Below, piece after piece: positions 13,223 to 52,018 of a DNA stretch of 64,000 nucleotides. The notes under the pieces are model-generated. The model made no database searches and had not been told where the DNA came from. It saw only the letters and a list, made by a program, of their open reading frames with translations. A program made the position numbers and the translations under genes. Within the stretch, counting starts at the first letter, position 1. Each line of letters opens with the position of its first letter. Location: the IMG/VR virus record IMGVR_UViG_3300035703_000010, positions 62,001 to 126,000 of that record. One strand, given 5' to 3'.

Positions 13223-13239
13223 ATTGGTAGAGATATAAT

Positions 13240-15592: not shown

Positions 15593-15649
15593 TTTTTTTA
15601 ATCAAACAATAATTTAAGTTTTATAATACTAAAAAGTTGAAGGCAAAAA

Positions 15650-17626: not shown

Positions 17627-17712
17627 TAAAAATTTTTATTAAATAATTTCTATTTCTTAATTACATTATATTATTTATTTTTTGTAACCACACAAGAAAG
17701 GATCTGACCTTA

Positions 17713-19584: not shown

Positions 19585-19589
19585 TAAAA

Positions 19590-20012: not shown

Positions 20013-20029
20013 TTTTTTTTTTAGTAACA

Positions 20030-20036
20030 ATAATTA
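20030..20036 (+). promoter_or_regulatory. Candidate late promoter motif ATAATTA
   Basis: Upstream of the 20067-scaffold-MCP run. Confidence 0.45.
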
Positions 20037-20066
20037 AAGTATATATATTTGCACGAGGGTTATATC

Positions 20067-20369: not shown

Positions 20370-20414
20370 TTGATCTATTTTATAATTTTAATTTCTTTGT
20401 AAGGAGGAAATAAT

Positions 20415-20909
20415 ATGGCTGGTCAAGGAAAATATACTGTTTATGCTCCGCCTAGTGGCGAAAAAAATACTTTGCTAGCGAAGTTATTTCCAAAATCTCC
20501 AACTGCACAGTTTGTTGGAAAAGAAGAAGATTACAGAAAAATCGTTCTTGAACAAGGAAATTTGAATCTAAAGAATGGATTACAAATGGGAGATTCATAC
20601 TTTGGAACTGGTGTGAATATGGATTTTGTAGGCTCACCGGACATCAGCAAAGGTGCTGATGGAATGTGGACAAGATCAGGAGATCCTGCAAATTCATACA
20701 CACCAGACATAACATCTCCAGGACCAGGAAAGACGGACGGGTCTGATAAAAATGAAGATCCTGGAATAAAAGCAGTCGATTTAAAGCCTACCTATGTCCC
20801 AGGTGGTCCCAATACTGGAACAAGAAATCCAGCTGAGTTTGCAAAAAAGATTGCTGCGCAAACGTTGGGTGTCGCTAATAAGATGGGATCTTCAGATTCT
20901 AACGGTTGA
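20415..20909 (+). CDS. Hypothetical protein (Gly/Pro-rich)
   Basis: Strong SD AAGGAGG. 164 aa directly upstream of the scaffold gene. Confidence 0.7.
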   Translation: MAGQGKYTVYAPPSGEKNTLLAKLFPKSPTAQFVGKEEDYRKIVLEQGNLNLKNGLQMGDSYFGTGVNMDFVGSPDISKGADGMWTRSGDPANSYTPDITSPGPGKTDGSDKNEDPGIKAVDLKPTYVPGGPNTGTRNPAEFAKKIAAQTLGVANKMGSSDSNG

Positions 20910-20926
20910 TTTTCGGAGATAATAAA

Positions 20927-22876: not shown

Positions 22877-22886
22877 TCCTCGAGTA

Positions 22887-22909
22887 AACAACTTTTTTAA
22901 CAACTTTTT
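22887..22909 (+). repeat. Tandem direct repeat AACAACTTTTT(T) x2 in the scaffold-MCP spacer
   Basis: 22887-22898 AACAACTTTTTT and 22899-22909 AACAACTTTTT, just upstream of the MCP SD (AGGAG). Confidence 0.8.
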
Positions 22910-22932
22910 GTACACGTATAGGAGATACAACA

Positions 22933-36747: not shown

Positions 36748-36813
36748 GTTACCACCTAATTTAGTTATTTTTGCATAGTAATCAAGCACCACGCTTGATT
36801 TTCTACGCAATGA

Positions 36814-38198: not shown

Positions 38199-38870
38199 AT
38201 GGCAAGGCTTTTTATTACTCAAAGAGAAATAAACTTTATTTCTGATATAACAAAAGAAATAGTCAAGGATGTAGTAGGACAAAAGATCTACTATTATCCA
38301 GTTTCTGAAACAAAAACAAAATCTCATGAAGTGTATGATGAAGCTTTGCAAAAAATATTTGATAATCCGATAGTAGTTGATGTTTTAGTAAATAGCGAAT
38401 TTCAAACTGAAACGAAGATTAACAAGTTTGGAATTGACGCTCAATTTACATTAGAAGTGTATATACAGCATAGAGACATGGTAGAAAAAGCTATCAATCC
38501 ATCAATAGGAGATTATTTTTCATTTGGTGCAATATTCTACGAGATTACAGAATATAAATACATGAGGACCATTTACGGTCAAGCTGAAAACATAGATGGA
38601 GTTTCTTTAATTGGAACTAGAGTTCGTGAAAGCCAATTTAAAGCTCTTACAAATGGTCCAACTGACATTAAGTATTCTGATAAAGACGCCATACAAGATA
38701 CATTCGTTCAGCAACGTGGTTATGAAAATGATGCTAATGGAGATCCTACAGGAGACGTTAGAGATCTTGTTAAAAACGGAGTTCTTGATGAACCTTTGAC
38801 AGGTCCTAAACAAGTATCTCCAAAAGGTGACTTAACCGGTGCTGGAAGCGCATTTTACGATGAGGATTGA
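38199..38870 (+). CDS. Neck/head-closure protein (T4 gp14-like)
   Basis: GQKIYYYP...VYDEA...KFGID...PSIGDYF...YEIT. Follows the gp13-like gene. Confidence 0.65.
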   Translation: MARLFITQREINFISDITKEIVKDVVGQKIYYYPVSETKTKSHEVYDEALQKIFDNPIVVDVLVNSEFQTETKINKFGIDAQFTLEVYIQHRDMVEKAINPSIGDYFSFGAIFYEITEYKYMRTIYGQAENIDGVSLIGTRVRESQFKALTNGPTDIKYSDKDAIQDTFVQQRGYENDANGDPTGDVRDLVKNGVLDEPLTGPKQVSPKGDLTGAGSAFYDED

Positions 38871-38872
38871 TT

Positions 38873-40213
38873 ATGCCTACTAGATTTAATTCTAAAAGTC
38901 AAGATAGATTTGGTGTTGCAGGTATTAATGCAGACAATCACCAAGGTACTGCTGATTTGACAATACCCCCAGTAGGCATAGAAGATGTTGACGTTGCCTT
39001 ATTTAAATTATTTGAAAATGAAATTAATTTGCAGGTAGGAGGAGATAATTCTGATTTTAAAAAGGTTCCTGTCATTTTTGCAACAGGAGAAAAATGGGCA
39101 ATTTTAAAGAAAAAAAAAGCTCTAAGAGATAAGAATAATTCTCTCATATTACCTTTAATAACGATATCTAGAACCTCAATTTCTCAAGATATTTCTTCAG
39201 ACATTGCTGGAAGAGGAATCAACCAACAAACTGGAGAAATTGTCATACGAAGAAGGTTAGATAAATCTGACAGAGGATATCAAAATTTAATCAATAGATT
39301 TTTGCTAAAAAATCAAAAGAACGTTGCAACAAACCCCACCAAAGAACATTTAGACAACCAACTATTGACTGACAGGACAGTCGGAGAAGATTCTAATGAA
39401 TCTTTAGTTGATGATGGAGCTTGGCTTGCTGACGTCAAAACAAACAACATTTATGAAACGATAGTCATACCATCACCACAGTTTTATAACGTTACTTATG
39501 AAGTAACGATGTGGACGCAATATACTCAACACATGAATCAATTGCTGGAACAAATTGTTTCATCATTTTTACCTCAGGCTAATTCATGGAAGCTACAAAC
39601 CCCTAAAGGATATTGGTTCGTAGCAACCGTAGACAATAATTCTTATGAACCTGAAAACAACTTAGACGAAATAGGTCAAGAAGAAAGAGTCATAAAGTAT
39701 AAATTTTCAGTTAATGTAAAATCTTACGTTTTTGCTTCTCAACATCCTGGTAATGGAGTTCCTATCAAACGCTGGGTATCATATCCTATTGTCACATTCG
39801 ATACGGGGCTAGAACCAGGAGGAGGAATGGGTCTATATCCAGCGCCAGGTTCTCAAGATCCATTTTTAGGATCTGACGACCCAACGCTTCCTTTAAGTGA
39901 TTCTAAAAACTCAACTCCTGGGCAACGTAATGTTGGAGGGACTATGTTGTATAATCCTAAAGATATAACTTCTGCAGATCCAGCAAGACAAAGCAGATCT
40001 TCAAAACAATATGCCCCAATTTATAAAAAGATAGTTTCTACTGATTTAAACGGAAACAAGTCGATAAATCACGTAAGAGTATATTCTGTTAATCAGCCCT
40101 CAGGAGAGTCTGTAATAAAAATAGCTACTCAGGTTGGATCAACACCAGCTCCGTCATTAGCAGAATCTTTATTAGGGGGATTAACATATCATACGATGCA
40201 AGATGATGAATAA
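38873..40213 (+). CDS. Tail sheath stabiliser/terminator (T4 gp15-like)
   Basis: KVPVIFATGEKW, LPLITISR, YEVTMWTQYTQHMNQLLEQI. Lies between neck and sheath genes. Confidence 0.65.
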   Translation: MPTRFNSKSQDRFGVAGINADNHQGTADLTIPPVGIEDVDVALFKLFENEINLQVGGDNSDFKKVPVIFATGEKWAILKKKKALRDKNNSLILPLITISRTSISQDISSDIAGRGINQQTGEIVIRRRLDKSDRGYQNLINRFLLKNQKNVATNPTKEHLDNQLLTDRTVGEDSNESLVDDGAWLADVKTNNIYETIVIPSPQFYNVTYEVTMWTQYTQHMNQLLEQIVSSFLPQANSWKLQTPKGYWFVATVDNNSYEPENNLDEIGQEERVIKYKFSVNVKSYVFASQHPGNGVPIKRWVSYPIVTFDTGLEPGGGMGLYPAPGSQDPFLGSDDPTLPLSDSKNSTPGQRNVGGTMLYNPKDITSADPARQSRSSKQYAPIYKKIVSTDLNGNKSINHVRVYSVNQPSGESVIKIATQVGSTPAPSLAESLLGGLTYHTMQDDE

Positions 40214-40236: not shown

Positions 40237-40243
40237 ATACTTA
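40237..40243 (+). promoter_or_regulatory. Candidate late promoter motif ATACTTA(T)
   Basis: Upstream of sheath 1. Confidence 0.5.
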
Positions 40244-40280
40244 TAAGAGAAGTTTATTCATTGCATGAAGGAGCAGGATA

Positions 40281-43200
40281 ATGGCTGAGCAAGTTTTTAG
40301 GTCTCCTAATTTTTTTGAGAGAGAAATAGAGTTAAAAGCACCACCAAGCGGAGGTCCTGTAGGCGTACCAGCTGGTGTAATCGGAATGTCAAATAAAGGA
40401 CCGGCTTTTGTACCGGTCACGGTTGCCAATTTTAATGAATTCGTTAGCGTGTTTGGAGACTTAGATCCTAAAAAGTTCGGTCCTTATGCCGTAAATGAGT
40501 TTTTAAAGAATAGAACAGCATTAACTTATATGAGAGTGTTAGGCGCAGGATCAAATAAAACTGCTACTGACATTTCTTCCACTGCATTAACTGGAAGAGT
40601 AAAAAATGCTGGGTTTAAGCTTGAAGGTAATTTAGCATCTCATGATGCTCAAGGTCGTCATGCTGGTGCAGTTCAGTTTTTAGTTGCAGATCATACCCTA
40701 CAAACTAACGAAGCGTATGGAATGCCCATGTTTACTGATAATGATTCACGTTCACAAACTAGCAACGTCAATCTAATCAGAGGAGTTGTCATGTTAGCAT
40801 CTGGTGCTAGAATGATAGTTCTCAATGGAAATGAAAATGTTCCACCTGCATTCGTAGGAGCTACTACGATTGATGACGCAGCTCAAGTAAAAAGTGGAAA
40901 ATTTAAGTTAGTTATTTCATCTGCATTAGGATCAACATTCGCATTTGATGATAAGCTACCTGGAATAAAGGTTTATACTGCATCCTTAAATCCTTCTAGC
41001 GACGATTATTTTGCTAAAGTATTAAATAGAGATCCTGAAAAGTTTGAGCAATACCAACATTTACTTCATTCTGATTTTGCAGTTGATGATGAAATTGCAA
41101 AAGTTGTTGATGATGATTACGTTGCAGTGTTGTCAGGATCTGCATCAACAAGCAATGTTTCAGGTGAACCAACTACTGAGTTTAGAAAAGCTTTTGGTGC
41201 CTTTGATACTAGATTTACTTCACCAAAGACTCCATCCTTCATCTCTCAACCATTCGGTTCTACTGAATACGATTTATTCCAAGTTGAATCATTAGATGAT
41301 GGTGCATATGCAAATAGCCTCTACAAGATCTCAATAACAAACTTAAAGGTTTCTGAGAATGAAGCATATGAGTATGGAACGTTTAACGTTCAAGTCCGCG
41401 ATTGGAATGACACAGATTTAAATCCTGCAGTTTTAGAAGAATTCGTCAACTGTTCTTTAGATCCTGATTCAGACAATTACATCGGAAAAGTTATAGGCGA
41501 TAGAAAAGTAACTTATGATTTTGATCAAGACATTCTTTCCGAAAGAAGAATCATCACGAGCGGCAAGTATGACAATGTGTCAAAATACATTAGAGTTATA
41601 ATTTCTCAAAATGTTGAAGATAAAAAAGTTCCAGCTGCCTCGTTGCCATTTGGATTCAGAGGGCCAGAATTACTAAAGACTAATGATACCTTGAAAGACG
41701 GAGAAATTGCAGCAACTGGAGCTGCTGCCTCATCATTAAAGAGATTAACCGGATTGTTTGCTTCTGATGCAGTCGGTTTCCTCTCACAATCAATATTACC
41801 ACCTGTCCCCTTTAGATTCAAGGTAACGAAAGGTCCGATGACAACACCCGCATGGGATGGTGATCCAGGACCACAAGAGGTTGCATCTCCTCAATTCTAT
41901 TGGGGCGTTAAGTTTGAAAGAAATGATTCACCATTAAATTCAAACATTTCTGAAGTAAAGAATAGCCTCTTAGAAAGCTATACGAAGTTTAGCGGAATCA
42001 AAAAGTTAGATGTTCTTGTAACTGGCTCAGGCGCGGATACATTTAACAACAACAAATTCTCATTATCTAATGTAGCATTTTCAGCAGGAACGATTGCTCA
42101 ATTAACAGGCACCGTTCGATCTCACATGAAAGAAGCTGCATACATCAGAAATGCAAAAGTTGATCCAACAACATACACGATTAATGATGCTGTATTAGGA
42201 GAAAGAATAACATTCGCTTCTCTATTATCAAATGGTGAACCATACGAGTTTAACAAGTATTCATCTTTTGCTAAGTTCACTACATTCATGCAAGGAGGAT
42301 TTGATGGATTAAACATCTTAGATCCTGCTGCATCAAGGATGAATGATAAAGCAACTTCTTTCGAAACTCCTCTTGGAGGAGCATCATCTACTTTCACATC
42401 TCCTGGAATGTTAACAAACCTTGCCGGAGTAGGAGTAGATAATAACGCGGTAAATTCATACATTACTGCAATTGATGTTATGACGGATCCCTTACAAGTC
42501 AACGTCAATTTATTGGCAATACCAGGAATTCGTGAAGATTACATAACGAACTACACGTCAAAGAAGATTAGAGACTATGGCTTAGGCATGTATATCATGG
42601 ATCTTCCAAACTACGATGACGATGACAATCGTATTTATGATGATTCAACAGCAAGAATCAACATTGAAAACACTGCAGCAACTTTTGAGGCAAGATCATT
42701 TGACAACAATTATGTTGCAACTTATTTCCCAAATGTTTACGTAAATGATGTAACTAACAATAGATACGTTAAAGTTCCATCATCTGTCGCTGCTTTAGGA
42801 GCGTTAGGGTTTAATGATAAAGTTGCATATCCGTGGTTCGCACCAGCAGGATTCAATAGAGCAGCTTTAGACTTCGTTAACAACGTAGAAGTTAGACTTA
42901 ACGTTTCTGATAGAGATAGACTCTATGATGCTAGAATTAATCCAATTGCAACTTTCCCAAGATTGGGATTTGTAATTTATGGACAAAAGACATTACAAAT
43001 AAGAAAATCAGCATTGGATAGAGTCAACGTTCGTAGATTACTTTTAGAAGTCAAGCGTTTAATCATCAACATAGCAAACAGAATTGTGTTCGAACAAAAC
43101 ACACCAGCTGTTCGTAACAAGTTTGTTGCAGACGCAATACTTCAATTAGGATTAATTCAAGCACAAGCTGGTATTGAAGCATACCAAGTTGTCATGAATG

Positions 43201-43331
43201 AAACGAACAATACGCAAGAAGATGTTGATCTAAATAGACTAAATGGAAGAATCGTCGTTGTTCCGACAAGAGCAATTGAATTTATTGCAATTGACTTCAT
43301 CGTAACAAATTCAGGCGTTCAGTTCGTTTGA
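40281..43331 (+). CDS. gp18: Tail sheath protein, paralog 1
   Basis: N-terminal SPNFFEREIEL...GPAFVPV. C-terminal PWFAPAGFNR...RINPIATF...YGQKTL...RVNVRRLL...PTRAIEFIAIDF. Confidence 0.92.
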   Translation: MAEQVFRSPNFFEREIELKAPPSGGPVGVPAGVIGMSNKGPAFVPVTVANFNEFVSVFGDLDPKKFGPYAVNEFLKNRTALTYMRVLGAGSNKTATDISSTALTGRVKNAGFKLEGNLASHDAQGRHAGAVQFLVADHTLQTNEAYGMPMFTDNDSRSQTSNVNLIRGVVMLASGARMIVLNGNENVPPAFVGATTIDDAAQVKSGKFKLVISSALGSTFAFDDKLPGIKVYTASLNPSSDDYFAKVLNRDPEKFEQYQHLLHSDFAVDDEIAKVVDDDYVAVLSGSASTSNVSGEPTTEFRKAFGAFDTRFTSPKTPSFISQPFGSTEYDLFQVESLDDGAYANSLYKISITNLKVSENEAYEYGTFNVQVRDWNDTDLNPAVLEEFVNCSLDPDSDNYIGKVIGDRKVTYDFDQDILSERRIITSGKYDNVSKYIRVIISQNVEDKKVPAASLPFGFRGPELLKTNDTLKDGEIAATGAAASSLKRLTGLFASDAVGFLSQSILPPVPFRFKVTKGPMTTPAWDGDPGPQEVASPQFYWGVKFERNDSPLNSNISEVKNSLLESYTKFSGIKKLDVLVTGSGADTFNNNKFSLSNVAFSAGTIAQLTGTVRSHMKEAAYIRNAKVDPTTYTINDAVLGERITFASLLSNGEPYEFNKYSSFAKFTTFMQGGFDGLNILDPAASRMNDKATSFETPLGGASSTFTSPGMLTNLAGVGVDNNAVNSYITAIDVMTDPLQVNVNLLAIPGIREDYITNYTSKKIRDYGLGMYIMDLPNYDDDDNRIYDDSTARINIENTAATFEARSFDNNYVATYFPNVYVNDVTNNRYVKVPSSVAALGALGFNDKVAYPWFAPAGFNRAALDFVNNVEVRLNVSDRDRLYDARINPIATFPRLGFVIYGQKTLQIRKSALDRVNVRRLLLEVKRLIINIANRIVFEQNTPAVRNKFVADAILQLGLIQAQAGIEAYQVVMNETNNTQEDVDLNRLNGRIVVVPTRAIEFIAIDFIVTNSGVQFV

Positions 43332-43355
43332 TGCTAAAAATTCTTAGGTAATCTG

Positions 43356-43362
43356 ATACTTA
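43356..43362 (+). promoter_or_regulatory. Candidate late promoter motif ATACTTA(TCA)
   Basis: Upstream of sheath 2. Confidence 0.5.
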
Positions 43363-43388
43363 TCAAGCAAGTTGTAGGAGCGAAATAA

Positions 43389-46300
43389 ATGGCACAGCTC
43401 AAATTTGGAAGCGCAGGGGTAACGACTAGAGAAATTGATTTAACAGGACCAGTTGAAACGTCACCTACAGGTGTTCCTGCAGGAATAATTGGTACCGCAG
43501 TGAAAGGACCAGCATTCGTTCCTTTAACTTATGGTACTTTAAATGACTTTTTTGCAAAATTCGGTGCTAGTGATTCTAAGAAATTTGGACCAATGGCTGT
43601 TGCCGAATGGCTTAGAAGAGCAACATCAGTTACTTATCTTAGAGTTTTAGGCGTTGGTGATGGTAAGAAAAGATCTTCTAGCGGTCAAACTGCAGGTGAT
43701 GTAACTAATGCAGGGTTTACAGTTGGAGAGCAACTTCCTTCTTCAAACGGAACATTATCATCAAATCCTTATGCAAATGAAAATGGCGTTTTGGGAAGAA
43801 CATATTTCCTCGGATGCTTTATGTCAGAATCAGTAGGTTCTACATTATTCAATGGCGCAGGATTACAAGGAACAGGTAGCGTTAATGGAATTGGTATAAA
43901 CACAGCAGTTCCAATCGTCAGAGGTGTGTTGATGGCACCTTCTGGAGTAGTTTTACGCTTGTCTGCTTCTGCAGCAGGATTAGATTCAAACAAACCATCT
44001 TCATCTTTAGTTGGATCAGATGCAACCGCAAAAGGAACATCATTAGGTTCTTTGGTGTTTGGATCGACACATTCAAAACAGGAATTTACTCTTCTCCTTA
44101 ACGGACACAAAGGAACAGATTCTTCATATCCGAATGTTTTGACTGCATCATTTGATGTAACATCTGCAAACTATATTAGCAAGGTTTTAAATACCGACCC
44201 TTATAAGATCCAGCAAGCAGGACATTATTTAGCAGCACATTGGGATATACACCCAACTCTAGCTGTAGTCACGGGAGTAGGAGCAGTTTCAGAATCTCCA
44301 GTTAATAACAGCGAAAGATCTGTTTTCTTACTCACATCCTCTTTAGCAAGAAACATTGGATCTTCTGAAGTTCCAAACTATGAAGGTTTCAGAGACAGAT
44401 TTACAAATGCAAAAACTCCTTGGGTAATTTCTCAAAAGTTTGGTGGAACGCCAGAAAATCTATTTAAGCTTCACGCACTTGATTCTGGCGGTGGGGTTTC
44501 AAATAAATTTAAGATTTCTATTTACAATATAACTCCATCTTCTGATCCTTTGAACAAGTATGGATCATTTAGCTTAGCAATAAGAAACTTAACTGACACA
44601 GATATTGATCAAAAGGTTTTAGAAAAATGGGAAGGAATCAACCTAGATCCTTCTTCAGATAGATACATTTGTAAGGTCATTGGAGATATTGACGCATACT
44701 ATGATTTTGATCGTGATGAAGCAGCTCAAAAGCTTGTTATCGAAGGAAATTACGAGTTAAGATCAAGATATGTTCGCGTTGAAGTTTCTTCTGCTGTTTC
44801 AGAACAAGCAGTTGATCCTACTGCAATCCCAATGGGATTCAGAGGAATTTCACATTTGGTTACTTCAGGTTCATCTCCGCTTGCAAGCCTTGGAGGAGTT
44901 GATTCTTCGGCTTTATCAAATGCAACATTCACTAGAAACACTGTTGAACCACCACTTCCATTTAGAAATCATCTAAATGACGGAACTGGACAACAGACAC
45001 AAGTTAATTCAAGATATCATTGGGGTTCAAAGTTTGAACACATAATCAGTTTAACAGAACAAAATAGCTCTGTTTTACAAGACAAATCTTTCAATAGCTT
45101 TACGAAACATTTCCCATTGCATTCGATTACTAACATGAACTTTGTCGTTGCAGATAACTCTGGTGCTGCAGACACTGTTGCAAATGGAATTATTGATGTT
45201 GATAGATTCTGCAATAACTTGTTTACTCTAGAAAATGTCAAGATCTTAACAGGATCAAATGGAACAGTCGCACAAAATGACGATTGGAAGTATGCAACTT
45301 ACATTAGACAAGGAAACATTGTTGCAAATGACGCAGCGAAGACAAGAGCTGTTAATGTAAGCGATTTTTCTAATTCTCAGAATAGAAAGTTCCTTAAATT
45401 CTCTTTCATCATGCAAGGAGGATTCGATGGAGTTAATATCTTCGATAAAGATGAAGCAGAAATTAACAATGCAGCCGTTGTTGCAGACATGGATGATGTA
45501 AACAGAGGCCGTTCATCTGGCCCAAGCGTATCATCATACTTGAAGGCTCTTGAAGTTATGAAGAATACAACAAACGTTGATATTCAACTTCTTGCAATAC
45601 CTGGAATTAGAGCTCCAATTGTTACTGATGAAGCAATAAGAGCAACGGAAGAACGCTTTGATGCTCTCTATATCATGGATATAGAACAAGTTGATAAAGA
45701 CGGAAACTTGATAAACATTACTTCAAATGTTAAACCTTCAGTTACTGAGACAGTAGCGCAACATAAGGCAAGAAACCTTAACACATCTTTCGCTGCGTCT
45801 TACTTCCCTGACGTTTTAATCAAGGATCCATCATTACAAACAAATTCAGTCATCGTTCCACCTTCAGTCGTCGTCATGGGCGCTTTAGCATTGAACGATT
45901 CATTAGGATATCCTTGGTTCGCACCAGCAGGATTGACAAGAGGCGATCTACCTTCTACTCTTGAAACAAGCATCCAATTGAAGGATTCAGATTTGGATTC
46001 TCTATACGATGAAGACATCAATCCAATCTATGCTCCAACCACTACGACAAGAGGTGGTACGGGTCCAAAGGGTGGAGTTGTTGTATGGGGACAAAAGACG
46101 ATGCTTCAATCAGCATCTGCTCTTGATAGAATTAACGTAAGACGTCTTCTTATCGACATTCGTCGACAAGTTAGAGAGATTGCTCAAACAATCATCTTCG
46201 AGCCAAACCGCGAAGCGACCTTGGCAAGATTTACAGCTGCAGTTACTCCACGTCTTCAAAGAATTCAAGCTCTTGCAGGTCTTGAGAGATTCCGCGTGAT

Positions 46301-46439
46301 TATTGATTCTTCAACGACGACGCAACAAGACGTTGAGAACAACACGGTTCGCGGTAAGATCTTCTTACAACCCACCAAGACGATTGAATTCGTATCATTG
46401 GATTTCGTTGTGGCAAATAACCTACAACAAGTACAGTGA
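43389..46439 (+). CDS. gp18: Tail sheath protein, paralog 2
   Basis: SAGVTTREIDL...KGPAFVP, PWFAPAGLTRG, INPI, WGQKT, RINVRRLL, PTKTIEFVSLDF. Confidence 0.92.
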   Translation: MAQLKFGSAGVTTREIDLTGPVETSPTGVPAGIIGTAVKGPAFVPLTYGTLNDFFAKFGASDSKKFGPMAVAEWLRRATSVTYLRVLGVGDGKKRSSSGQTAGDVTNAGFTVGEQLPSSNGTLSSNPYANENGVLGRTYFLGCFMSESVGSTLFNGAGLQGTGSVNGIGINTAVPIVRGVLMAPSGVVLRLSASAAGLDSNKPSSSLVGSDATAKGTSLGSLVFGSTHSKQEFTLLLNGHKGTDSSYPNVLTASFDVTSANYISKVLNTDPYKIQQAGHYLAAHWDIHPTLAVVTGVGAVSESPVNNSERSVFLLTSSLARNIGSSEVPNYEGFRDRFTNAKTPWVISQKFGGTPENLFKLHALDSGGGVSNKFKISIYNITPSSDPLNKYGSFSLAIRNLTDTDIDQKVLEKWEGINLDPSSDRYICKVIGDIDAYYDFDRDEAAQKLVIEGNYELRSRYVRVEVSSAVSEQAVDPTAIPMGFRGISHLVTSGSSPLASLGGVDSSALSNATFTRNTVEPPLPFRNHLNDGTGQQTQVNSRYHWGSKFEHIISLTEQNSSVLQDKSFNSFTKHFPLHSITNMNFVVADNSGAADTVANGIIDVDRFCNNLFTLENVKILTGSNGTVAQNDDWKYATYIRQGNIVANDAAKTRAVNVSDFSNSQNRKFLKFSFIMQGGFDGVNIFDKDEAEINNAAVVADMDDVNRGRSSGPSVSSYLKALEVMKNTTNVDIQLLAIPGIRAPIVTDEAIRATEERFDALYIMDIEQVDKDGNLINITSNVKPSVTETVAQHKARNLNTSFAASYFPDVLIKDPSLQTNSVIVPPSVVVMGALALNDSLGYPWFAPAGLTRGDLPSTLETSIQLKDSDLDSLYDEDINPIYAPTTTTRGGTGPKGGVVVWGQKTMLQSASALDRINVRRLLIDIRRQVREIAQTIIFEPNREATLARFTAAVTPRLQRIQALAGLERFRVIIDSSTTTQQDVENNTVRGKIFLQPTKTIEFVSLDFVVANNLQQVQ

Positions 46440-46495
46440 AATTAATTCGATAAAAATGTTCGATATGTTTAGACATTAAAATATCGAATAAATTT

Positions 46496-46525
46496 TAAAG
46501 GCCTCTTATGAGGCCTTTATTTTTA
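46496..46525 (+). terminator. Rho-independent terminator after sheath 2
   Basis: Stem TAAAGGCCTC / GAGGCCTTTA (46496-46519), TTAT loop, then TTTTT. Confidence 0.85.
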
Positions 46526-46549
46526 TTGGTATGCATAGATAAAATCTGC

Positions 46550-46556
46550 ATAGTTA
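46550..46556 (+). promoter_or_regulatory. Candidate late promoter motif ATAGTTA(T)
   Basis: Downstream of the sheath-2 terminator, upstream of sheath 3. Confidence 0.5.
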
Positions 46557-46577
46557 TGAATCAAAGAATCTTGTTAA

Positions 46578-49500
46578 ATGCCAAACAATAACAATAGTCC
46601 AGGAGTTTCATCTAAAGACGCAGGAAGCATATCAAATGTTGATGTAAATGTTTCTTCACAAACGTATACATTGGTTATAGGTACGTCACCAAACGGACCA
46701 GCTTTTGTTCCTGTAGGATTTTCAAATGCTGCAGATTTTCGATCAGTGTTTGGTGTACCTAACGTTGTAGGATCTTCTATCACGCCGATTGGACGAGTCA
46801 CAAACTATGCTCCTTTTGGTGCATATCAATGGTTACAGAATCAAAATTCTCTAGCATTTATGAGAGTTTTAGGAGTAGGAAACGGTAAGAGAAGAGTAAC
46901 TTTAGGAACGAATGCTGGTGATGTAATTGGCGCTGGATTCACTGTCGGTGAAAATCAACCTTCAGGATCTTTAAAAGCTCTTGGTTCAAATCCTTATGCA
47001 AATGAAAATGGTGTTCCTGGAAGAACATACTTTTTAGGATGCTTCATGTCAGAATCTGCAAATTCTACATTTTTCAATGGAGCAGGACTACAAGGAACAG
47101 GAAGCGTCAATGGAATTGGAGTAAACACGTCAGTTCCAATTGTCAGAGGCATATTGATGGCACCTTCAGGAGTCATTTTGCGTTTATCTGCTTCTGCAAC
47201 AGGGCAAGATTCATCTGCTCCTTTATCGACACAATTTGCTATTGATTCATCAGCAAAAGGTGCTACTTTAGGCGATGTTAAACTGTTCAATGACAATGGA
47301 GCATCATTGCAACAGTTCGTAATTTTATTAAATGGTCATAAAGGCACAGAAGATTATCCCAACGTAATTACTGCATCATTTGATATAAAATCCAATCTAT
47401 ATCTTACAAGGGTTTTAAACACAACAGCTTCATTGATTCAAGAAGCAGGACATTATCTTGCAGCTAATTGGGACATACATCCTGCGATTGCAGTTTTAAC
47501 TGGATCTGGCGTCGTTGCTTCAGGAGCAGGTTCACCGAGTAATTCTTCAAGAGTGTTTTCTACTGAAAGATCTGCTTTTTTGCTTACATCGTCCTTATCA
47601 AGAGATGTAGGAAGTACATCTGTTCCAAATTATGAAAACTTTAGAGATAGATTTTCTAGTGCAACAACTCCGTGGATAATATCTCAAAAAATACACGGCA
47701 AGTATATAAACCTATTTAAGCTTCATTCACTATCAGATGGTGAACAAGGATCTTATAAGATAATCATAAGCAATATAAAACCAGCAAGTCAAGATTCTGA
47801 ATACGATTTTTGCACTTTCGACATCATCGTGAGATCTATTTACGATTTTGATGAAACAATCTCAGCTTTAGAAAAATACACTGTTTCATTAGACCCAAAA
47901 TCTGACATCTACATTTCAAAAGTGATAGGTGACAAATACACATATTTTGATTTTGACAGGCCTGATAACAATCAAAAGCTTGTTGTCGAAGGAAACTACC
48001 CAAACAGATCGACAAGATTTAGAGTTGAAGTTTCTGACGAAGTTTCAAATGATCGACTACCTTCAAATATTCTTCCTATGGGATTTAGAGGACTACCTCA
48101 TATAATCACATCTGGATCAAACGTAATGGCTCCGTTGGGAGGTCATGATGCTTCTGCATTAATAAATTCAAGCTTTTTAACTAATTTAGTCGTACCTCCA
48201 ATACCTCTTACTGAGAATATTGCTACGTTTTCTAACGGAACAAAAACCCCGTCTGACGTTCGACGGTGGGGACTTAAGTTTGATCATGTCACCAATGTTG
48301 AACAACAAAACAATTTTTACGATGCAAATTTGTCAACAATTTTGAAACATTTTCCGAATCACTCGACGACAAATATAAACTTTTCAGTTTCAGATAATCA
48401 AGGAACACCGGATACTTCTCAGTTAGGAATTGTTGATGCAGATAGATTTTGCAACAATGTCTTTACGTTAGAAAATATAAAAATTACAACAGGCTCAGCT
48501 GGATACGCTACGAAAGAAGGCTGGTCAAATGCCGTGTATATAAGAAACGGTATTATATCAGAAGATATGACAGCTAAAACAAGAAGAGTCAATGTTTCTG
48601 ATTTTAACGACATAATCAGCAGAAACTATCTAACATTTCAAACTTCTTTATACGGTGGATTTGACGGAACAAGCATTTTCGACGTTGATGAATTTAACAT
48701 GACTGATGCAGCAGTTGCATCTGACATGAATGATCCCAATAGAGGAAGAGAATTCGGTCCGTCTGTCATGTCTTATCTAAAGGCTTTAGAAATAATAAAT
48801 GACACGACAACCATAGATACTAGCTTGTTAGCAATTCCAGGAATTAGAGCTCCGATTGTTACTGATGCTGCTATAAATGTTGCAGAAAGCAGGATGGATT
48901 GTTTATACCTGATGGATATAGAACAATTTGATGGATCAGGAAATAGAATAGATCTTTCAACAAGATTGCCGTATGACAAATCATTCGTTCCTGATATACA
49001 AAATACAATAAATGAATTTGACTCTAGGTCTTTAAATACTTCATATGCAGCTGCGTATTATCCTGACGTAGAATTGAAAATTGATGAAAATTTATATGGC
49101 ATTTCTACAGTTATAGTTCCTGCGACGGTTGCAGCATTAGGAGCGTTTTCTGTAAATGATACGCAAAGTTCTTTTTCAGCTCCAGCAGGAAATTCTAGAG
49201 GCGCCGCGCTAAACGTCTTATCTACTGTTTCAAAATTAAAGAAATCAGATGAAAATTCTTTATACGAAAAAAATATCAATTATCTAATAGCTAGCAATAC
49301 ATCAGTCGGTGGAGAACAGACAGGAATTATTGTTCAAGGACAAAAAACCTTGGGTAAATCTAGAAGTTCATTATCTTCACTATCTAGAATCAATGTTAGA
49401 AGAATGCTTCTTGAAGCAAGAAGAAGAATAAGAGTCATAGCAATGAGACTCTTGTTCGATCCAAATAGAGATTCTATTGTATCAAAATTTGTTTTGCAAG

Positions 49501-49697
49501 CTGGTGATGCTCTGTCTTCGATGCAATCTTCTTTTGGACTAGAAAATTATAAAATCGAAATTGATGCTTCTACGACGACGCAAAATGATATTGACAACAA
49601 CACGATTAGAGGAAAAATTTATATTAAGCCTGCTAAATCCATCGATTATGTATCAATAAATTACATTGTATCGAATAAACTACAGTCTGAAGTTTGA
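46578..49697 (+). CDS. gp18: Tail sheath protein, paralog 3 (diverged duplicate of paralog 2)
   Basis: SPGVSSKD, GPAFVP, FSAPAGNSRG, QGQKT, RINVRRML, PAKSIDYV. Collinear with and locally DNA-identical to paralog 2. Confidence 0.88.
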   Translation: MPNNNNSPGVSSKDAGSISNVDVNVSSQTYTLVIGTSPNGPAFVPVGFSNAADFRSVFGVPNVVGSSITPIGRVTNYAPFGAYQWLQNQNSLAFMRVLGVGNGKRRVTLGTNAGDVIGAGFTVGENQPSGSLKALGSNPYANENGVPGRTYFLGCFMSESANSTFFNGAGLQGTGSVNGIGVNTSVPIVRGILMAPSGVILRLSASATGQDSSAPLSTQFAIDSSAKGATLGDVKLFNDNGASLQQFVILLNGHKGTEDYPNVITASFDIKSNLYLTRVLNTTASLIQEAGHYLAANWDIHPAIAVLTGSGVVASGAGSPSNSSRVFSTERSAFLLTSSLSRDVGSTSVPNYENFRDRFSSATTPWIISQKIHGKYINLFKLHSLSDGEQGSYKIIISNIKPASQDSEYDFCTFDIIVRSIYDFDETISALEKYTVSLDPKSDIYISKVIGDKYTYFDFDRPDNNQKLVVEGNYPNRSTRFRVEVSDEVSNDRLPSNILPMGFRGLPHIITSGSNVMAPLGGHDASALINSSFLTNLVVPPIPLTENIATFSNGTKTPSDVRRWGLKFDHVTNVEQQNNFYDANLSTILKHFPNHSTTNINFSVSDNQGTPDTSQLGIVDADRFCNNVFTLENIKITTGSAGYATKEGWSNAVYIRNGIISEDMTAKTRRVNVSDFNDIISRNYLTFQTSLYGGFDGTSIFDVDEFNMTDAAVASDMNDPNRGREFGPSVMSYLKALEIINDTTTIDTSLLAIPGIRAPIVTDAAINVAESRMDCLYLMDIEQFDGSGNRIDLSTRLPYDKSFVPDIQNTINEFDSRSLNTSYAAAYYPDVELKIDENLYGISTVIVPATVAALGAFSVNDTQSSFSAPAGNSRGAALNVLSTVSKLKKSDENSLYEKNINYLIASNTSVGGEQTGIIVQGQKTLGKSRSSLSSLSRINVRRMLLEARRRIRVIAMRLLFDPNRDSIVSKFVLQAGDALSSMQSSFGLENYKIEIDASTTTQNDIDNNTIRGKIYIKPAKSIDYVSINYIVSNKLQSEV

Positions 49698-51370
49698 ATT
49701 TCTAATTCAAAAACATAATTTTTGCATCCCCATATTTTGACTACTCCTGCGTGTTCAGCTACTTGTGCTTCAGTCAATCCTTCAGAAGCGTCAGCTTTAA
49801 ACTTAAATCTGTTGTATCTATTTTCGAAATCAGTCCACCAAAATCGAGGAGGAGTGGTTGAGGACAATACAAATCCAGCATGTTGATATCCATCGCCAGA
49901 TCCTCCCCAGCGGCTATCAACATATGTTATTATTTTTTTATAACCATTTTCATTACACCATTTTTTAGAATATTTTATTAGCTTACTAATGCCTCCTGGC
50001 ACGTTGTGATTTAACGCAGGACAACATCTAGCAACTTCTATTCCTTCATGCTTTTTATGAAAAGGTTTTCTTAAAGACAAGGCATAAACTATTTTTTCTT
50101 GATTGTCAAAGAGGCCAAACGCTATGATAGATGTTACGTCTCCATCTGCATGATTTTCTTCAAAAAACGTTTTTCGTTCTTGTTTTGTTAAATGTCTAAT
50201 TTTGCATTTTCTTGCATGTATAGTTTGGATTGACATTCCTAATCTAGAAGATATCATCGATTTGACTATGTCCTGTTTGTCTCTCCATTCATCTTCAAAT
50301 ACATGCATCAATTTGATTCCTGCGCATGCTGATTGAACAGACTTATTGTCATGATAATTTTGGGTTTTATTAACATGGCTGTGCCAATACAATCCGTTGT
50401 ATTCTATTGCAAGATGTTTATCTTCAATAAAGATGTCTAATTCAAGACCTCCTAACGTTTTTCTTATATTTCTTTTAACGTTGAATCCCAATGATTCAAT
50501 CCACTTTGCAAGTTCTTCTTGAGCAGCAGAACCTCCTGGAGAACATGAAAAACAACGACCGCGTTGAAGACTTCTTAAAGATCCTTGAAATTGTTTTCCG
50601 CATCCCTTACATTCTACTATGATAACCTTTTGTGCATCGTTTATATAACTTTCAAGACCTCCTATAACAGTAAGTTGTCCTGATTTTTCTATTCTTCCTT
50701 TTATTTCATCATGTGATAATCTTTTTAAATGATCTAACCTATTTCTTATTTGTTTTTCTTTTAATTTTATTGAAACCTTTTGTGATATCTTCTTGACCCT
50801 GTCGTCTGTTTCTTTGGTTAGACCTTTTGCCCAAGGCGTTAATTCCCCTGTTTCAAATCTGCTTTTTAAATGTTCTTTAGCTTTTTTTATTCTATCATCA
50901 GTCTCAGATGACAATCCTTTGTTCCAAGCCTTTATTTTTCCTGTTTCAAACCTTTCTTTTCTTCCTTTGCTAGTTGCTTCTGCTCTATTTTTGATTCTAA
51001 AATCAGATTCTTTTGTTAATCCTGCAGCCCATCCTGGTTTTCCCTTTAACGACTTTGATCTTTTTTCTGCGACTTTTTTTGCAGATTCTTGATCCATCAC
51101 CTTATAGATGAAAGCATTATGTCCATTAATGACTTTTGAATACCCATTCCACCATCCATTCCATTTTGTATAGGCCTCGCATCCACAAGCACACTTAACT
51201 GGACCATCATTCAATTGATCCCATAACTCTTTGCAAGTTGTTTGATGTTCTTCTTGAAGATGACGTTCAAACGCAGTCAGTCTTTTTGACTCAAACCCGA
51301 TGCATAGCGGACATTTTACGATTCTTAGGCCACTTTTATTTGTAGCCATCCGTTCTTGCTCTTCCATCAC
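49661..51370 (-). mobile_element. Free-standing homing endonuclease (Hef-like): Zn motifs, NUMOD3-like repeats, PD-(D/E)XK/DUF559-like nuclease, GNAT-like C-terminus
   Basis: CPLC...H...H, CACGC, three W.xGL(T/S)xE(T/S)DxR repeats, CxxC...CxxC, ELDIFIEDKHLAIEYNGLYWHS, C-terminal IHARKC...ITYVDSRW...KIWGCK. Antisense within the tail operon. Confidence 0.75.
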
Positions 51371-51471: not shown

Positions 51472-51960
51472 ATGGCTGAGACATTAGACGTTACATCAAT
51501 GATTCCCAATAAATTCGAGCCAAAGCGCAAGAATCGTTGGGTTCTTATGATTGAAGGTATTGATGCTTATATAATGAAGACCGCTGCACGTCCTCAAATA
51601 TCAACTGAAGAAGTTGCAATTCCATTCATCAATTCAACTCGTTATCTTGCAGGAAGAACTACATTCGGACAAATGAACATCACACTTCATGATCCAATTG
51701 CACCATCTGGAGCACAACAGGTCATGGAATGGATTCGTTTGCATTTTGAATCAGTTTCAGGTCGTTCTGGTTATGCTGACTTCTACAAACGCGACATTCA
51801 ATTGAAAATGTTAGATCCCGTTGGTACAGTCGTCGAATTATGGGACATTAAGGGAGCATTCATCATGGATGCAAACTTCAATGAAGTTACCTATGAAGAT
51901 GGCAACCCAGTTGAAATCTCATTAACTCTTCGTTATGACAATTGCGTGCTGCAATACTGA
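51472..51960 (+). CDS. gp19: Tail tube protein (T4 gp19-like)
   Basis: EPKRKNRW, ARPQI...IPFIN...YLAGR, ITLHDP, VMEW, YKRDI.L..LDP.G..VE.W..KGAF. SD AGGAG. Confidence 0.9.
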   Translation: MAETLDVTSMIPNKFEPKRKNRWVLMIEGIDAYIMKTAARPQISTEEVAIPFINSTRYLAGRTTFGQMNITLHDPIAPSGAQQVMEWIRLHFESVSGRSGYADFYKRDIQLKMLDPVGTVVELWDIKGAFIMDANFNEVTYEDGNPVEISLTLRYDNCVLQY

Positions 51961-51982: not shown

Positions 51983-52018
51983 AAAAGGCCTATGTTTTCA
52001 TAGGCCTTTTTTGTTTTT
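51983..52018 (+). terminator. Rho-independent terminator after the tail tube
   Basis: 12-bp stem AAAAGGCCTATG / CATAGGCCTTTT, TTTT loop, then TTGTTTTT. Confidence 0.88.

What the first reader, a model, noticed from the sequence alone, without database searches (positions are those of the whole stretch)
40281..49697. Three full-length tandem tail sheath paralogs serving one tube gene
Seen: three consecutive ORFs of 1016, 1016 and 1039 aa, each with sheath N- and C-terminal motifs and its own ATANTTA motif. A terminator separates 2 from 3. Paralogs 2 and 3 are collinear and share DNA-identical runs (e.g. 26 nt at 43761-43786 and 46986-47011), indicating a more recent duplication. Paralog 3 has drifted at conserved positions (FSAPAG for WFAPAG, INYL for INPI). 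Known: T4 has a single gp18, whereas Afp and PVC contractile injection systems use three sheath proteins. Inference: a heteropolymeric or positionally layered sheath in a true phage, or alternative tails.
Basis: partly seen in the sequence, partly recalled or inferred. Interest (0 to 1): 0.68.

Follow-up and report, generated by a model that had tools for sequence, protein, structure and literature searches.

The report
Phage with three sheath gene copies
An uncultured freshwater jumbo phage carries three tandem copies of its contractile-tail sheath gene: two ancient, equally conserved partners that probably build a two-protein sheath, and a younger, fast-changing third copy that is kept by selection but probably no longer acts as a bulk building block.

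Summary
There are three tandem ORFs of 1016, 1016 and 1039 aa, all gp18-type sheath proteins. They lie between a gp15-like sheath terminator and a single gp19-like tube gene, in a 204.7-kb IMG/VR phage record that also carries terminase, portal and capsid genes. The copies fall into two classes.

**S1 and S2 (34% identical).** This duplication is ancient. S1 precedes S2 in 46 of 46 related loci with enough sequence, down to about 40% identity. Both evolve slowly at the same rate (dN/dS about 0.03-0.06), are most conserved in the polymerisation core, and each has a conserved promoter-like motif and a strong ribosome-binding site. The best reading is an obligate two-component sheath, with precedents in Pseudomonas phage PaBG and the Afp2/Afp3 trunk.

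**S3.** S3 is a later duplicate of S2, found only in the low-GC subclade (36 of 36 loci; none in more distant relatives). It sits behind a conserved terminator, with a variant motif and a weak ribosome-binding site. Its protein has diverged about 3.5 times as far as S2's since the duplication, mainly in the core. It has lost 22 of 78 core positions that are invariant in S1 and S2, but only 5 of 44 outer ones. It is still under purifying selection (dN/dS about 0.05-0.10). It is most likely a low-copy, specialised sheath-derived subunit. Its position and stoichiometry are untested. I rate it a new variant of a known kind.

The parts
38867..40213 (+). gp15-like tail sheath stabiliser/terminator gene, directly upstream of the sheath genes
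   Evidence: Pfam T4-gp15_tss E 2.7e-15 and phrog_227; its position is syntenic in all relatives.
40237..40244 (+). ATACTTAT, a candidate promoter element for S1, followed by a strong GGAG ribosome-binding site
   Evidence: conserved in 9 orthologous upstream regions; the motif class is enriched about 11-fold upstream of genes.
40281..43331 (+). S1, sheath paralog 1 (1016 aa)
   Evidence: forms the S1 clade present in all relatives; dN/dS about 0.03-0.06.
43356..43363 (+). ATACTTAT, a candidate promoter element for S2, followed by a strong GGAG ribosome-binding site; no terminator between S1 and S2
43389..46439 (+). S2, sheath paralog 2 (1016 aa)
   Evidence: forms the S2 clade present in all relatives; dN/dS about 0.03-0.06.
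43761..43988 (+). 228-nt stretch of S2 that is 84% identical to 46986-47213 in S3; it starts with the 26-nt identical run
   Evidence: local dS is 0.59 against more than 1 elsewhere; a small within-genome identity excess is seen in some lineages. This could be a gene-conversion patch on a strongly constrained segment.
46496..46527 (+). Intrinsic terminator (10-bp GC-rich stem, 4-nt loop, T run) that closes the S1-S2 unit
   Evidence: a stem-loop plus T run is visible at the same place in 7 of the 9 relatives shown; not discernible in the L032/L033 intergenic region.
46550..46557 (+). ATAGTTAT, a variant candidate promoter element for S3, followed by a weak purine-poor ribosome-binding site
   Evidence: The G variant and the weak site are conserved in all S3 orthologs shown.
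46578..49697 (+). S3, sheath paralog 3 (1039 aa): a younger duplicate of S2, fast-evolving, with a relaxed core
46986..47213 (+). The S3 copy of the 228-nt conserved stretch
49661..51370 (-). HNH/homing-endonuclease-like gene. It converges on S3, overlaps its last 37 nt, and is a mobile insertion rather than part of the tail module
   Evidence: phrog_3339 E 1e-74 and phrog_559; present, absent, moved or inverted among relatives.
51472..51960 (+). gp19-like tail tube gene, the only one found in the record
   Evidence: phrog_4542 E 1e-29; single match in the 204.7-kb record; 91-93% identical in three-copy relatives.
51983..52010 (+). Intrinsic terminator after the tube gene

Best explanation
The locus holds two different things.

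(1) S1 and S2 are an old, obligate pair. Both are needed to build the contractile sheath around the single tube, most likely as a roughly equimolar two-component lattice. Each has kept its own invariant N-terminal arm and C-terminal arm for the strand-exchange mesh that holds sheaths together.

(2) S3 arose later by tandem duplication of S2 in one low-GC subclade. It became a separate transcription unit behind a terminator, with a variant promoter-like motif and a weak ribosome-binding site. It then lost much of the constraint on the lattice-forming core while keeping the outer domains it shares with S2. I read it as a low-copy, sheath-derived subunit that can still dock on the S1/S2 lattice but is not a bulk lattice builder. 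It could form a terminal ring or be a sparse subunit.

Shown here: homology, order of duplication, rates, where constraint lies, expression signals, and the recombination breakpoint. Inferred: virion presence, stoichiometry and position.
For: **S1/S2 pair**
- S1 lies directly upstream of S2 in 46 of 46 related loci with enough sequence, down to about 40% identity.
- The S1/S2 split predates all these lineages (tree).
- The two diverge in step: 92/92, 90/90, 83/80, 76/74, 64/61 and 43/41% identity to the window across relatives.
- dN/dS is about 0.03-0.06 for both.
- Both are most conserved in the N-terminal 80 and C-terminal 200 residues, with conservation 0.84-0.99. These residues align to the gp18 inner domains.
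- Each has its own conserved ATACTTAT motif and GGAG site, with no terminator between them.
- Precedent: both PaBG sheath paralogs are virion proteins. Afp2 and Afp3 are both in the solved Afp trunk, cap and baseplate entries.

**S3**
- It is sister to S2 of the three-copy subclade.
- It is present in 36 of 36 loci whose S2 is at least 73% identical to the window's, and absent from the 60% and 40% clades, with no remnant between S2 and tube.
- Root-to-tip distance since the duplication is about 0.87 for S3 against 0.25 for S2.
- The nearest relative among 5.8 billion protein clusters is 66% identical for S3 and 93% for S2.
- S3 retains 56 of 78 core positions but 39 of 44 outer positions that are invariant in all 26 S1+S2 sequences.
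- The conservation profile is inverted: core 0.36-0.63, residues 121-400 0.58-0.77.
- The R-E-I-D N-arm motif is loosened to x-[D/E]-x-G, and most S3 have an 11-residue insert.
- The ORF is intact in 35 of 36 loci, and dN/dS is 0.05-0.10 in close pairs.
- The sheath fold is kept.
- The terminator (7 of 9 relatives shown), the ATAGTTAT variant and the weak ribosome-binding site are conserved.
- The codon-adaptation proxy is 0.665 for S3, like the low-copy gp15-like (0.658) and gp54-like (0.663) proteins. S1 scores 0.715, S2 0.735 and tube 0.775.
- Complex prediction of two S2 cores plus one S3 core gave weak support: score 0.51, best of 3 controls 0.00. The mark was reached by 51 of 78 solved complexes and 2 of 108 mismatched pairs. 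At 0.60 or under it was reached by only 5 of those 78 and by all 4 mismatches that passed. The runs agree in at least 89% of contacts, and the partner's pLDDT is at least 66. The pass may reflect memory of solved sheaths.
Against: - There are no protein-level data. No isolate, virion proteome or RNA run holds this phage, so presence in the virion, copy number and position are inferred for all three proteins.
- Equal rates and equal translation signals do not prove that S1 and S2 are both trunk components. In PVC only one of three paralogs builds the trunk.
- A structural end-ring adaptor would be expected to keep a conserved core that co-evolves with its partner. The five-fold faster core of S3 fits that picture only loosely.
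- Two-copy relatives assemble tails without S3, so whatever it does is dispensable at the level of the clade.
- One locus (L054) has S3 split over three frames.
- The codon-usage difference is small.
- dS is saturated in most pairs, so dN/dS rests on a few close pairs.
Confidence: 0.45

Rival explanations
1. S3 has left the tail lattice altogether. On this reading it is a neofunctionalised sheath paralog whose job depends on the outer domains it shares with S2. Candidates include a decoration or docking protein on the sheath surface, a host-surface or defence-facing protein under diversifying selection, or an assembly factor for S2.
For: Constraint is kept on outer residues 121-400 and relaxed in the core. 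Divergent S3 alleles sit beside nearly identical S1/S2: in L017 against L025, identity is 98-100% up to the S2/S3 intergenic region and 55-75% after it. That is the pattern usually seen for exchangeable, interaction-facing genes. Most S3 clusters no longer score as Pfam sheath C-domain in the precomputed annotation.
Against: S3 keeps full length, both arms, the GQKT and R-x3-RR core motifs and 56-71 of 78 core invariants. This is hard to explain if the core had no lattice-type contact left. The outer domains, which would face a host or a defence system, are its most conserved part rather than its most variable. The low identity in L017/L025 continues beyond S3, so the breakpoint may be ordinary mosaicism.
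Confidence: 0.18
2. Only one of S1 and S2 builds the trunk of the sheath. The other is the positional specialist (the ring next to the baseplate or neck), as Pvc3 and Pvc4 are in PVC. S3 would be a second specialist or a spare.
For: In PVC, Pvc2 is in the trunk, contracted-sheath and baseplate entries, while Pvc3 and Pvc4 occur only in the baseplate entry. Afp4 occurs only in baseplate entries. S1 and S2 have kept distinct arms over deep time.
Against: S1 and S2 evolve at the same slow rate, show the same conservation profile, have equally strong ribosome-binding sites and similar codon adaptation. A 6- or 12-copy adaptor and a bulk subunit of several hundred copies (my estimate from the tape-measure length) would usually differ in these respects. 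In PaBG both paralogs are visible bands in the virion proteome.
Confidence: 0.15
3. All three proteins are stoichiometric bulk components of a three-component heteropolymeric sheath.
For: All three are full-length with a sheath fold and arms. Each has a promoter-like motif. There is weak support for S3-core/S2-core contact.
Against: The 60% clade, which has the same S1 and S2, lacks S3. S3 has diverged about 3.5 times as far as S2 and has lost 28% of the invariant core positions. It sits behind a terminator with a weak ribosome-binding site. A bulk lattice subunit must fit both the extended and the contracted lattice and should be as constrained as S1 and S2.
Confidence: 0.08
4. S3 is a redundant duplicate drifting towards loss, with no function of its own.
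For: It evolves faster, its constraint is relaxed, and one relative has a frameshifted copy.
Against: A 3.1-kb ORF stays open in 35 of 36 loci although synonymous sites are saturated between most of them. dN/dS is 0.05-0.10 in close pairs. Its own terminator (most relatives), motif and start context are conserved.
Confidence: 0.07
5. Alternative tails: individual virions use either S2 or S3 with S1, giving two tail types from one genome.
For: S3 derives from S2 and shares its outer domains. It has a separate transcription unit and a variant motif.
Against: No switch, invertible element or regulator is seen. The S3 core has diverged at positions that S2 keeps invariant, so S3 is unlikely to replace S2 one-for-one. 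Nothing in the data calls for this reading.
Confidence: 0.05
6. Assembly artefact: the third copy is a mis-joined strain variant of S2.
For: The source is metagenomic, and a 228-nt stretch is shared at 84% identity.
Against: S2 and S3 are only 51% identical. Contigs from other studies bridge the junction with 0-2 differences: X4 covers 45835-47084 and X7 covers 46400-46701. The same layout is seen in 36 related loci.
Confidence: 0.01

Closest known systems
Two-component tail sheath of Pseudomonas jumbo phage PaBG and the proposed 'Lupandier' group (Kurochkina et al. 2018, as cited in PMC7412058)
   Same: A true jumbo myophage with two sheath paralogs (38% identical there, 34% here) that arose by gene duplication. 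In PaBG both are virion proteins. The review PMC9230969 notes that some phage genomes encode two sheath copies.
   Different: The PaBG proteins are about 58 kDa and are encoded by genes 76 and 213, far apart by number. Here the proteins are about 110 kDa and the genes are tandem. This is a different, uncultured clade with T4-like capsid and tail genes. There is a third paralog, and I found no phage report of that in the paper library. Virion presence is untested here.
Afp (Afp2/3/4) and PVC (Pvc2/3/4) extracellular contractile injection systems
   Same: Three sheath paralogs serve one tube family. [quoted passage not shown] S1+S2 resemble Afp2+Afp3, and S3 may resemble Afp4 or Pvc3/4.
   Different: Those are capsid-less tailocin-like particles with sheaths of 350-450 aa. 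Sequence identity to the S3 model is 14-19%. The duplications here happened inside this phage clade, so the triplication is independent. The fast core evolution of S3 has no described counterpart in Afp4, Pvc3 or Pvc4.
T4 gp18 (single sheath protein)
   Same: It is the best structural and sequence match. The gene neighbourhood is the same: gp15-like, sheath, gp19-like tube, gp48/54-like baseplate protein. The presumed mesh mechanism is the same, with N- and C-terminal extensions inserted into the C-terminal domains of the ring below, as described for phiKp24 gp118.
   Different: T4 has one gene of 659 aa. Here there are three genes of about 1020 aa with larger outer domains.
Microcystis phage Mel-JY01 and the uncultured 484-kb phage LR756508
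   Same: These are the nearest records in the phage collection. Mel-JY01 has the same order of adaptor, gp15-like, sheath, tube and gp54-like genes. LR756508 has two sheath paralogs of 830 and 827 aa about 1 kb apart.
   Different: Mel-JY01 has a single sheath gene of 812 aa. Identity to the window's proteins is only 27-36%. Neither has three copies.

Membership tests
Contractile-tail sheath proteins (T4 gp18 / Phage_sheath_1 superfamily) | C-terminal sheath domain recognisable by sequence | tested here: met
   phrog_23 E 9e-51 (S1), 1e-54 (S2), 5e-29 (S3). Pfam PF17482 scores are 22.4, 28.8 and 26.4 bits against a cut-off of 26.9, so only S2 passes. The family profile matches T4 gp18 at E 4e-43.
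Contractile-tail sheath proteins (T4 gp18 / Phage_sheath_1 superfamily) | Sheath fold in three dimensions | tested here: met
   The S3 model (pLDDT 81.7) has T4 gp18 9mkb as its top Foldseek hit (E 7e-18), followed by other phage, pyocin and eCIS sheaths. S1 and S2 were not folded.
Contractile-tail sheath proteins (T4 gp18 / Phage_sheath_1 superfamily) | N-terminal and C-terminal extension arms for the inter-ring mesh | tested here: inconclusive
   The arms are present and invariant in S1 and S2. In S3 they have the same length, but the R-E-I-D motif is loosened and the sequence is variable. Whether they engage a neighbour cannot be read from sequence. The complex prediction gave only weak support.
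Contractile-tail sheath proteins (T4 gp18 / Phage_sheath_1 superfamily) | Encoded beside tube and sheath-terminator genes of a tail module | tested here: met
   The order gp15-like, S1, S2, S3, (HNH), tube, gp48/54-like is seen here and is conserved in relatives.
Contractile-tail sheath proteins (T4 gp18 / Phage_sheath_1 superfamily) | Polymerises on the tube and contracts | not testable with these tools
   This needs virions or recombinant polysheaths.
Two-component phage sheath (PaBG type) | Two diverged sheath paralogs from a duplication, both retained | tested here: met
   S1 and S2 are 34% identical. The duplication node lies below all relatives. They co-occur in 46 of 46 loci.
Two-component phage sheath (PaBG type) | Both proteins present in the virion tail | not testable with these tools
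   No isolate, proteome or RNA run is available.
Two-component phage sheath (PaBG type) | Descent from the same duplication as PaBG/Lu11 | not tested
   PaBG is not among the 30 best phage records for S2, and its proteins are half the size. No joint tree was built.
eCIS three-sheath sets (Afp2/3/4, Pvc2/3/4) | Three sheath paralogs in one locus | tested here: met
eCIS three-sheath sets (Afp2/3/4, Pvc2/3/4) | Capsid-less injection particle with no head or packaging genes | tested here: not met
   Terminase, portal and major head protein genes lie at window 13622-24825. The record is classed as a virus.
eCIS three-sheath sets (Afp2/3/4, Pvc2/3/4) | Orthology of the paralogs to Afp2/3/4 or Pvc2/3/4 | tested here: not met
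   Both duplications lie inside this phage clade. Identity to eCIS sheaths is 14-19% and limited to the core.

The most novel reading that the evidence does not exclude
S3 may be the first example of a phage sheath paralog that has escaped the contractile lattice. On this reading it is a sheath-derived protein kept for its outer domains, exchanged between closely related phages as a cassette, and serving an interaction-facing role such as sheath decoration or docking, host-surface contact, or dealing with a host defence. It would sit beside an obligate two-protein sheath shared by a very large, globally distributed clade of uncultured jumbo phages.
Probability: 0.18. Interest if true: 0.75.

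Novelty: new variant of a known kind. Interest (0 to 1): 0.55.

Why it matters
Contractile sheaths are a standard example of a machine built from one protein that must fit two lattices, extended and contracted.

This locus suggests that a large, widespread clade of uncultured jumbo phages has used two non-interchangeable sheath proteins for a very long time. More than 2000 homologous protein clusters were found, on contigs up to 357 kb, and the window's own sequence turns up in 12 studies of freshwater, groundwater and other aquatic samples. If so, the PaBG two-component sheath would be a recurrent solution rather than a curiosity.

The third copy is a natural experiment in what happens to a lattice protein after duplication. 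Its core relaxes while its outer domains stay constrained. That marks which residues the lattice constrains, and may show how the positional sheath specialists of Afp and PVC systems arise.

The locus gives clear targets for cryo-EM, for recombinant polysheath work and for engineering sheath surfaces.

Tried and rejected
**Searches that found nothing**
- No RNA run holds the stretch, so relative expression could not be measured. The runs that were laid are contigs, so depth cannot rank the genes.
- The paper searches for three sheath genes in a phage found nothing. The PaBG primary paper (PubMed 29268081) is not held.

**Artefacts and failed runs**
- The apparent joint '47213 goes back to 44000' in two runs is cross-matching of the 228-nt shared stretch, not a rearrangement.
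- The first tree, with 96 rows and the mixture model, did not finish. I reduced it to 53 rows with LG+G4 and a quick search. The long branches of LR756508 and Mel-JY01 make the deepest nodes unsure, so I draw no conclusion on whether the LR756508 duplication is the same event.
- The first all-pairs dN/dS script timed out and was redone on one alignment per paralog. In that script a simple N-terminal pattern put three mis-trimmed S2 rows (L011, L015, L016) among S3; the L015-L016 row is not used.
- Folding the S3 outer region alone (residues 100-700) gave a poor model (pLDDT 55.5, first 260 residues under 50). It was not searched against structure libraries, so the outer domains remain without a functional assignment.

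**Ideas tested and set aside**
- Concerted evolution of S2 and S3 is at most local. Within-genome identity exceeds between-genome identity only for residues 121-200, and only in some lineages.
- I looked for a recombination tract private to S3. L032/L033 and L005/L007 show general mosaicism. L017/L025 show a sharp breakpoint at the S2/S3 boundary, but low identity continues downstream.
- I looked for an S3 remnant in two-copy genomes and found none.

- The large representative search was not used, because the claim does not rest on absence of relatives.
- No alternative genetic code was used.
- Read laying was given exactly 6000 letters.

Full report
**The observation**

The window has three consecutive + strand ORFs at 40281-43331, 43389-46439 and 46578-49697, encoding 1016, 1016 and 1039 aa. 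I call them S1, S2 and S3.
- They are collinear over their whole length. Identity is 34% for S1/S2, 51% for S2/S3 and 29% for S1/S3.
- All three match the PHROG tail-sheath family phrog_23 (E 9e-51, 1e-54, 5e-29) and the Pfam sheath C-terminal domain. Only S2 passes the Pfam cut-off.
- A profile built from 43 family members matches T4 gp18 at E 4e-43. Its N-terminus (positions 7-85) and last 190 positions align to gp18 residues 4-82 and 463-649.
- An AlphaFold2 model of S3 (mean pLDDT 81.7, pTM 0.85) has T4 gp18 as its best Foldseek hit (E 7e-18), followed by other phage, pyocin and eCIS sheaths.
The 26-nt identical run at 43761/46986 opens a 228-nt stretch of 84% identity. FSAPAG and INYL in S3 stand where S1 and S2 have WFAPAG and INPI.
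- A strong terminator lies at 46496-46519.
- ATACTTAT, ATACTTAT and ATAGTTAT lie 44, 33 and 28 nt before the three start codons.

**Context**

The window is bases 62001-126000 of a 204,651-base IMG/VR virus record that CheckV rates 60% complete.
- It carries a large terminase, a portal and a gp23-like major head gene.
- Around the sheath genes lie a head-tail adaptor, a gp15-like sheath terminator, a gp19-like tube, a gp48/54-like baseplate protein and a tape-measure-like protein of 1373 aa. This is therefore a phage and not a tailocin or eCIS.
- Only one tube gene is found in the record.
- The gene between S3 and the tube (49661-51370, - strand) resembles HNH or homing endonucleases. In relatives it is absent, moved or inverted, so it is a mobile insert.
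- The stretch is held by runs from 12 studies of freshwater, groundwater and other aquatic samples.
- Contigs from two other studies bridge the S2-S3 junction with 0-2 differences. Together with the related loci below, this rules out an assembly artefact.

**Relatives and the order of events**

S2 brought in 69 related IMG/VR loci. A word search found more than 2000 homologous protein clusters, all metagenomic, on contigs up to 357 kb.
- In all 46 loci with enough upstream sequence, an S1 ortholog lies directly before S2, down to relatives only about 40% identical.
- In a tree of 53 copies, S1 and S2 form two clades that each contain every lineage. Their duplication therefore predates the whole group (quick LG+G4 search; the deepest nodes involve long branches and are not relied on).
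- S3 forms a clade sister to the S2 of one subclade only. It is present in all 36 loci whose S2 is at least 73% identical to the window's and that extend far enough.
- S3 is absent from the 60% clade (L041, L042, L051, L060) and from the 40% clade.
- In the two-copy genomes, the space between S2 and the tube holds either 43 nt or a small unrelated ORF. There is no S3 remnant.
- The ancestral order was therefore gp15-like, S1, S2, tube. S3 is a later tandem duplicate of S2.
- The nearest cultured relative, Microcystis phage Mel-JY01, has the same gene order with one sheath gene of 812 aa.
- The uncultured 484-kb phage LR756508 has two sheath paralogs.

**Selection**

S1 and S2 diverge in step across relatives.
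- Their dN/dS is about 0.03-0.06.
- Both are most conserved where sheath proteins make the lattice. Mean pairwise identity among 12 orthologs is 0.87-0.93 in the first 80 residues and 0.84-0.99 in the last 200.

S3 differs.
- Its root-to-tip distance since the duplication is about 0.87 substitutions per site, against about 0.25 for S2.
- Its nearest relative among 5.8 billion protein clusters is 66% identical, against 93% for S2.
- Its conservation profile is inverted: 0.44-0.49 in the first 80 residues, 0.36-0.63 in the last 200, and 0.58-0.77 in residues 121-400.
- Of 122 alignment columns invariant in all 26 S1 and S2 sequences, the window's S3 keeps 56 of 78 in the core and 39 of 44 in the outer region. 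Other S3 orthologs keep 54-71 and 36-41.
- The N-terminal arm motif (S1 F-F-E-R-E-I, S2 T-R-E-I-D-L) is loosened to x-[D/E]-x-G. Most S3 carry an 11-residue insert after the conserved F-G.
- The window's own subclade has further lost PWFAPAG, INP and WGQKT.

S3 is nevertheless not decaying.
- The 3.1-kb frame is open in 35 of 36 loci although synonymous sites are saturated between most of them.
- In the few close pairs (dS 0.08-0.31), dN/dS is 0.05-0.10. That is two to three times the 0.03-0.04 of S1 and S2 at dS 0.5-0.6.
- One locus (L054) has the third copy split over three frames. This is either a rare loss or an assembly error.

Divergent S3 alleles also sit beside nearly identical S1/S2. 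L017 and L025 are 98-100% identical through S1 and S2. Identity drops to 55-75% exactly at the S2/S3 intergenic region and stays low beyond S3. Other pairs show general mosaicism. Part of the apparent speed of S3 is therefore allele exchange.

**Expression signals**

- ATACTTAT followed by a GGAG-type ribosome-binding site is conserved upstream of S1 and S2 in nine relatives whose flanks have diverged. There is no terminator between S1 and S2.
- Upstream of S3, the ATAGTTAT variant and a weak, purine-poor ribosome-binding site are conserved in all nine, and the terminator is visible in seven of them (not in L032/L033).
- In the whole record, 34 of 108 ATANTTA sites lie within 60 nt upstream of a gene on the same strand, where 3.0 are expected. 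AT-rich spacers explain part of this. I call the motif a candidate promoter, no more.
- A codon-adaptation proxy referenced to capsid, tube and portal gives S1 0.715, S2 0.735 and S3 0.665. S3 is close to the low-copy gp15-like (0.658) and gp54-like (0.663) proteins. The effect is small.

**How it most likely works**

[quoted passage not shown] S1 and S2 each keep their own version of these arms invariant over deep time. They evolve at the same slow rate and have equal translation signals. I infer that both are bulk, non-interchangeable lattice components of a two-protein sheath. Whether they alternate by ring or within rings cannot be said.

S3 keeps the fold, both arms in loosened form and most core invariants. 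It has shed much of the two-state lattice constraint and appears to be made in smaller amounts. I infer a low-copy subunit that docks on the S1/S2 lattice, either as an end ring or as a sparse subunit.

A complex prediction of two S2 cores with one S3 core gave only weak support.
- The score was 0.51, and the best of 3 controls was 0.00.
- The mark was reached by 51 of 78 solved complexes and 2 of 108 mismatched pairs.
- At 0.60 or under it was reached by only 5 of those 78 and by all 4 mismatches that passed.
- The runs agree in at least 89% of contacts, and the partner's pLDDT is at least 66.
- The pass may come from memory of solved sheaths.

Virion presence, copy number and position are all untested.

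**Comparison with what is known**

- Two-component sheaths are known in phage PaBG and its group. There the paralogs are 38% identical, both are virion proteins and they arose by duplication. A survey notes that some phage genomes encode two copies.
- Three sheath proteins are known in Afp and PVC. In the PDB, Afp2 and Afp3 occur in trunk, cap and baseplate entries and Afp4 only in baseplate entries. Pvc2 occurs in trunk entries, and Pvc3 and Pvc4 only in the baseplate entry.
- S1+S2 work like Afp2+Afp3 or the PaBG pair. S3 may work like Afp4, Pvc3 or Pvc4.
- Membership in the eCIS sets fails on two tested features. Head and packaging genes are present, and the duplications lie inside this phage clade.
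- Searches of the paper library for three sheath genes in a phage found nothing. That is a limited library, not proof of novelty.

**Verdict**

- The notable findings are an ancient two-protein sheath shared by a very large uncultured clade, and a younger third copy whose lattice core has relaxed while its outer domains stay constrained.
- I rate it a new variant of a known kind, with interest 0.55.

Noticed in passing
window 49661-51370 (- strand): A 569-aa HNH/homing-endonuclease-like gene (phrog_3339 E 1e-74) converges on S3 and overlaps its last 37 nt. In relatives it is absent, lies after the tube gene, or is inverted, so it is a mobile insertion in the tail module.
   Followed up: partly
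window 22933-24825 and 34378-36810: The major head gene (GC 0.505, GC3 0.467) and an 810-aa structural-protein-like gene on the - strand (GC 0.494) are far more GC-rich than the rest of the window (about 0.36). Whether this reflects codon bias for high expression, amino-acid composition or transfer is unexplained.
   Followed up: no
whole record G000; e.g. window 2437, 4501, 13216, 29823, 33220, 40237, 43356, 46550, 51433, 57943: ATANTTA is depleted overall (35 sites in the window against 64 expected) but concentrated just upstream of genes: 34 of 108 genome sites lie within 60 nt upstream on the same strand, against 3.0 expected. It is a candidate phage promoter element, with a conserved C (S1, S2) or G (S3) at position 4.
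   Followed up: partly
L054:1100-3914: In one relative whose S2 is 86% identical to the window's, the third sheath copy is split over three reading frames and lacks about 40 residues. This is either a pseudogene or an assembly error.
   Followed up: partly
L017:3800 against L025 (S2/S3 intergenic region): Two contigs are 98-100% identical through S1 and S2. Identity drops to 55-75% exactly at the S2/S3 intergenic terminator region and stays low through S3 and beyond, which marks a recombination breakpoint at the gene boundary.
   Followed up: partly
L041:13046-14205, L051:13100-13554, L042:13046-13434: The two-copy '60%' relatives are GC-rich in this stretch (0.54-0.57) and carry a small unrelated ORF of 116-126 aa between S2 and the tube gene. 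The family therefore spans phages of very different base composition, presumably with different hosts.
   Followed up: no
L073:7284-9773 and 10782-13262 (LR756508.1): An unannotated 484-kb uncultured phage also has two sheath paralogs (830 and 827 aa) about 1 kb apart. Long branches prevent deciding whether this is the same duplication as S1/S2.
   Followed up: partly
window 43761-43988 and 46986-47213 (S2 residues about 124-200, S3 about 136-212): This segment is the part of S2 and S3 most alike (80-87% aa identity in several genomes) but is not conserved in S1. In the window's lineage its dS is low (0.59), which suggests a small gene-conversion patch on a strongly constrained, S2/S3-specific surface of unknown function.
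   Followed up: partly
window 51983-52010: There is a strong terminator directly after the tube gene, and the tube gene has its own upstream motif, so the tube looks like a monocistronic, highly expressed unit.
   Followed up: no
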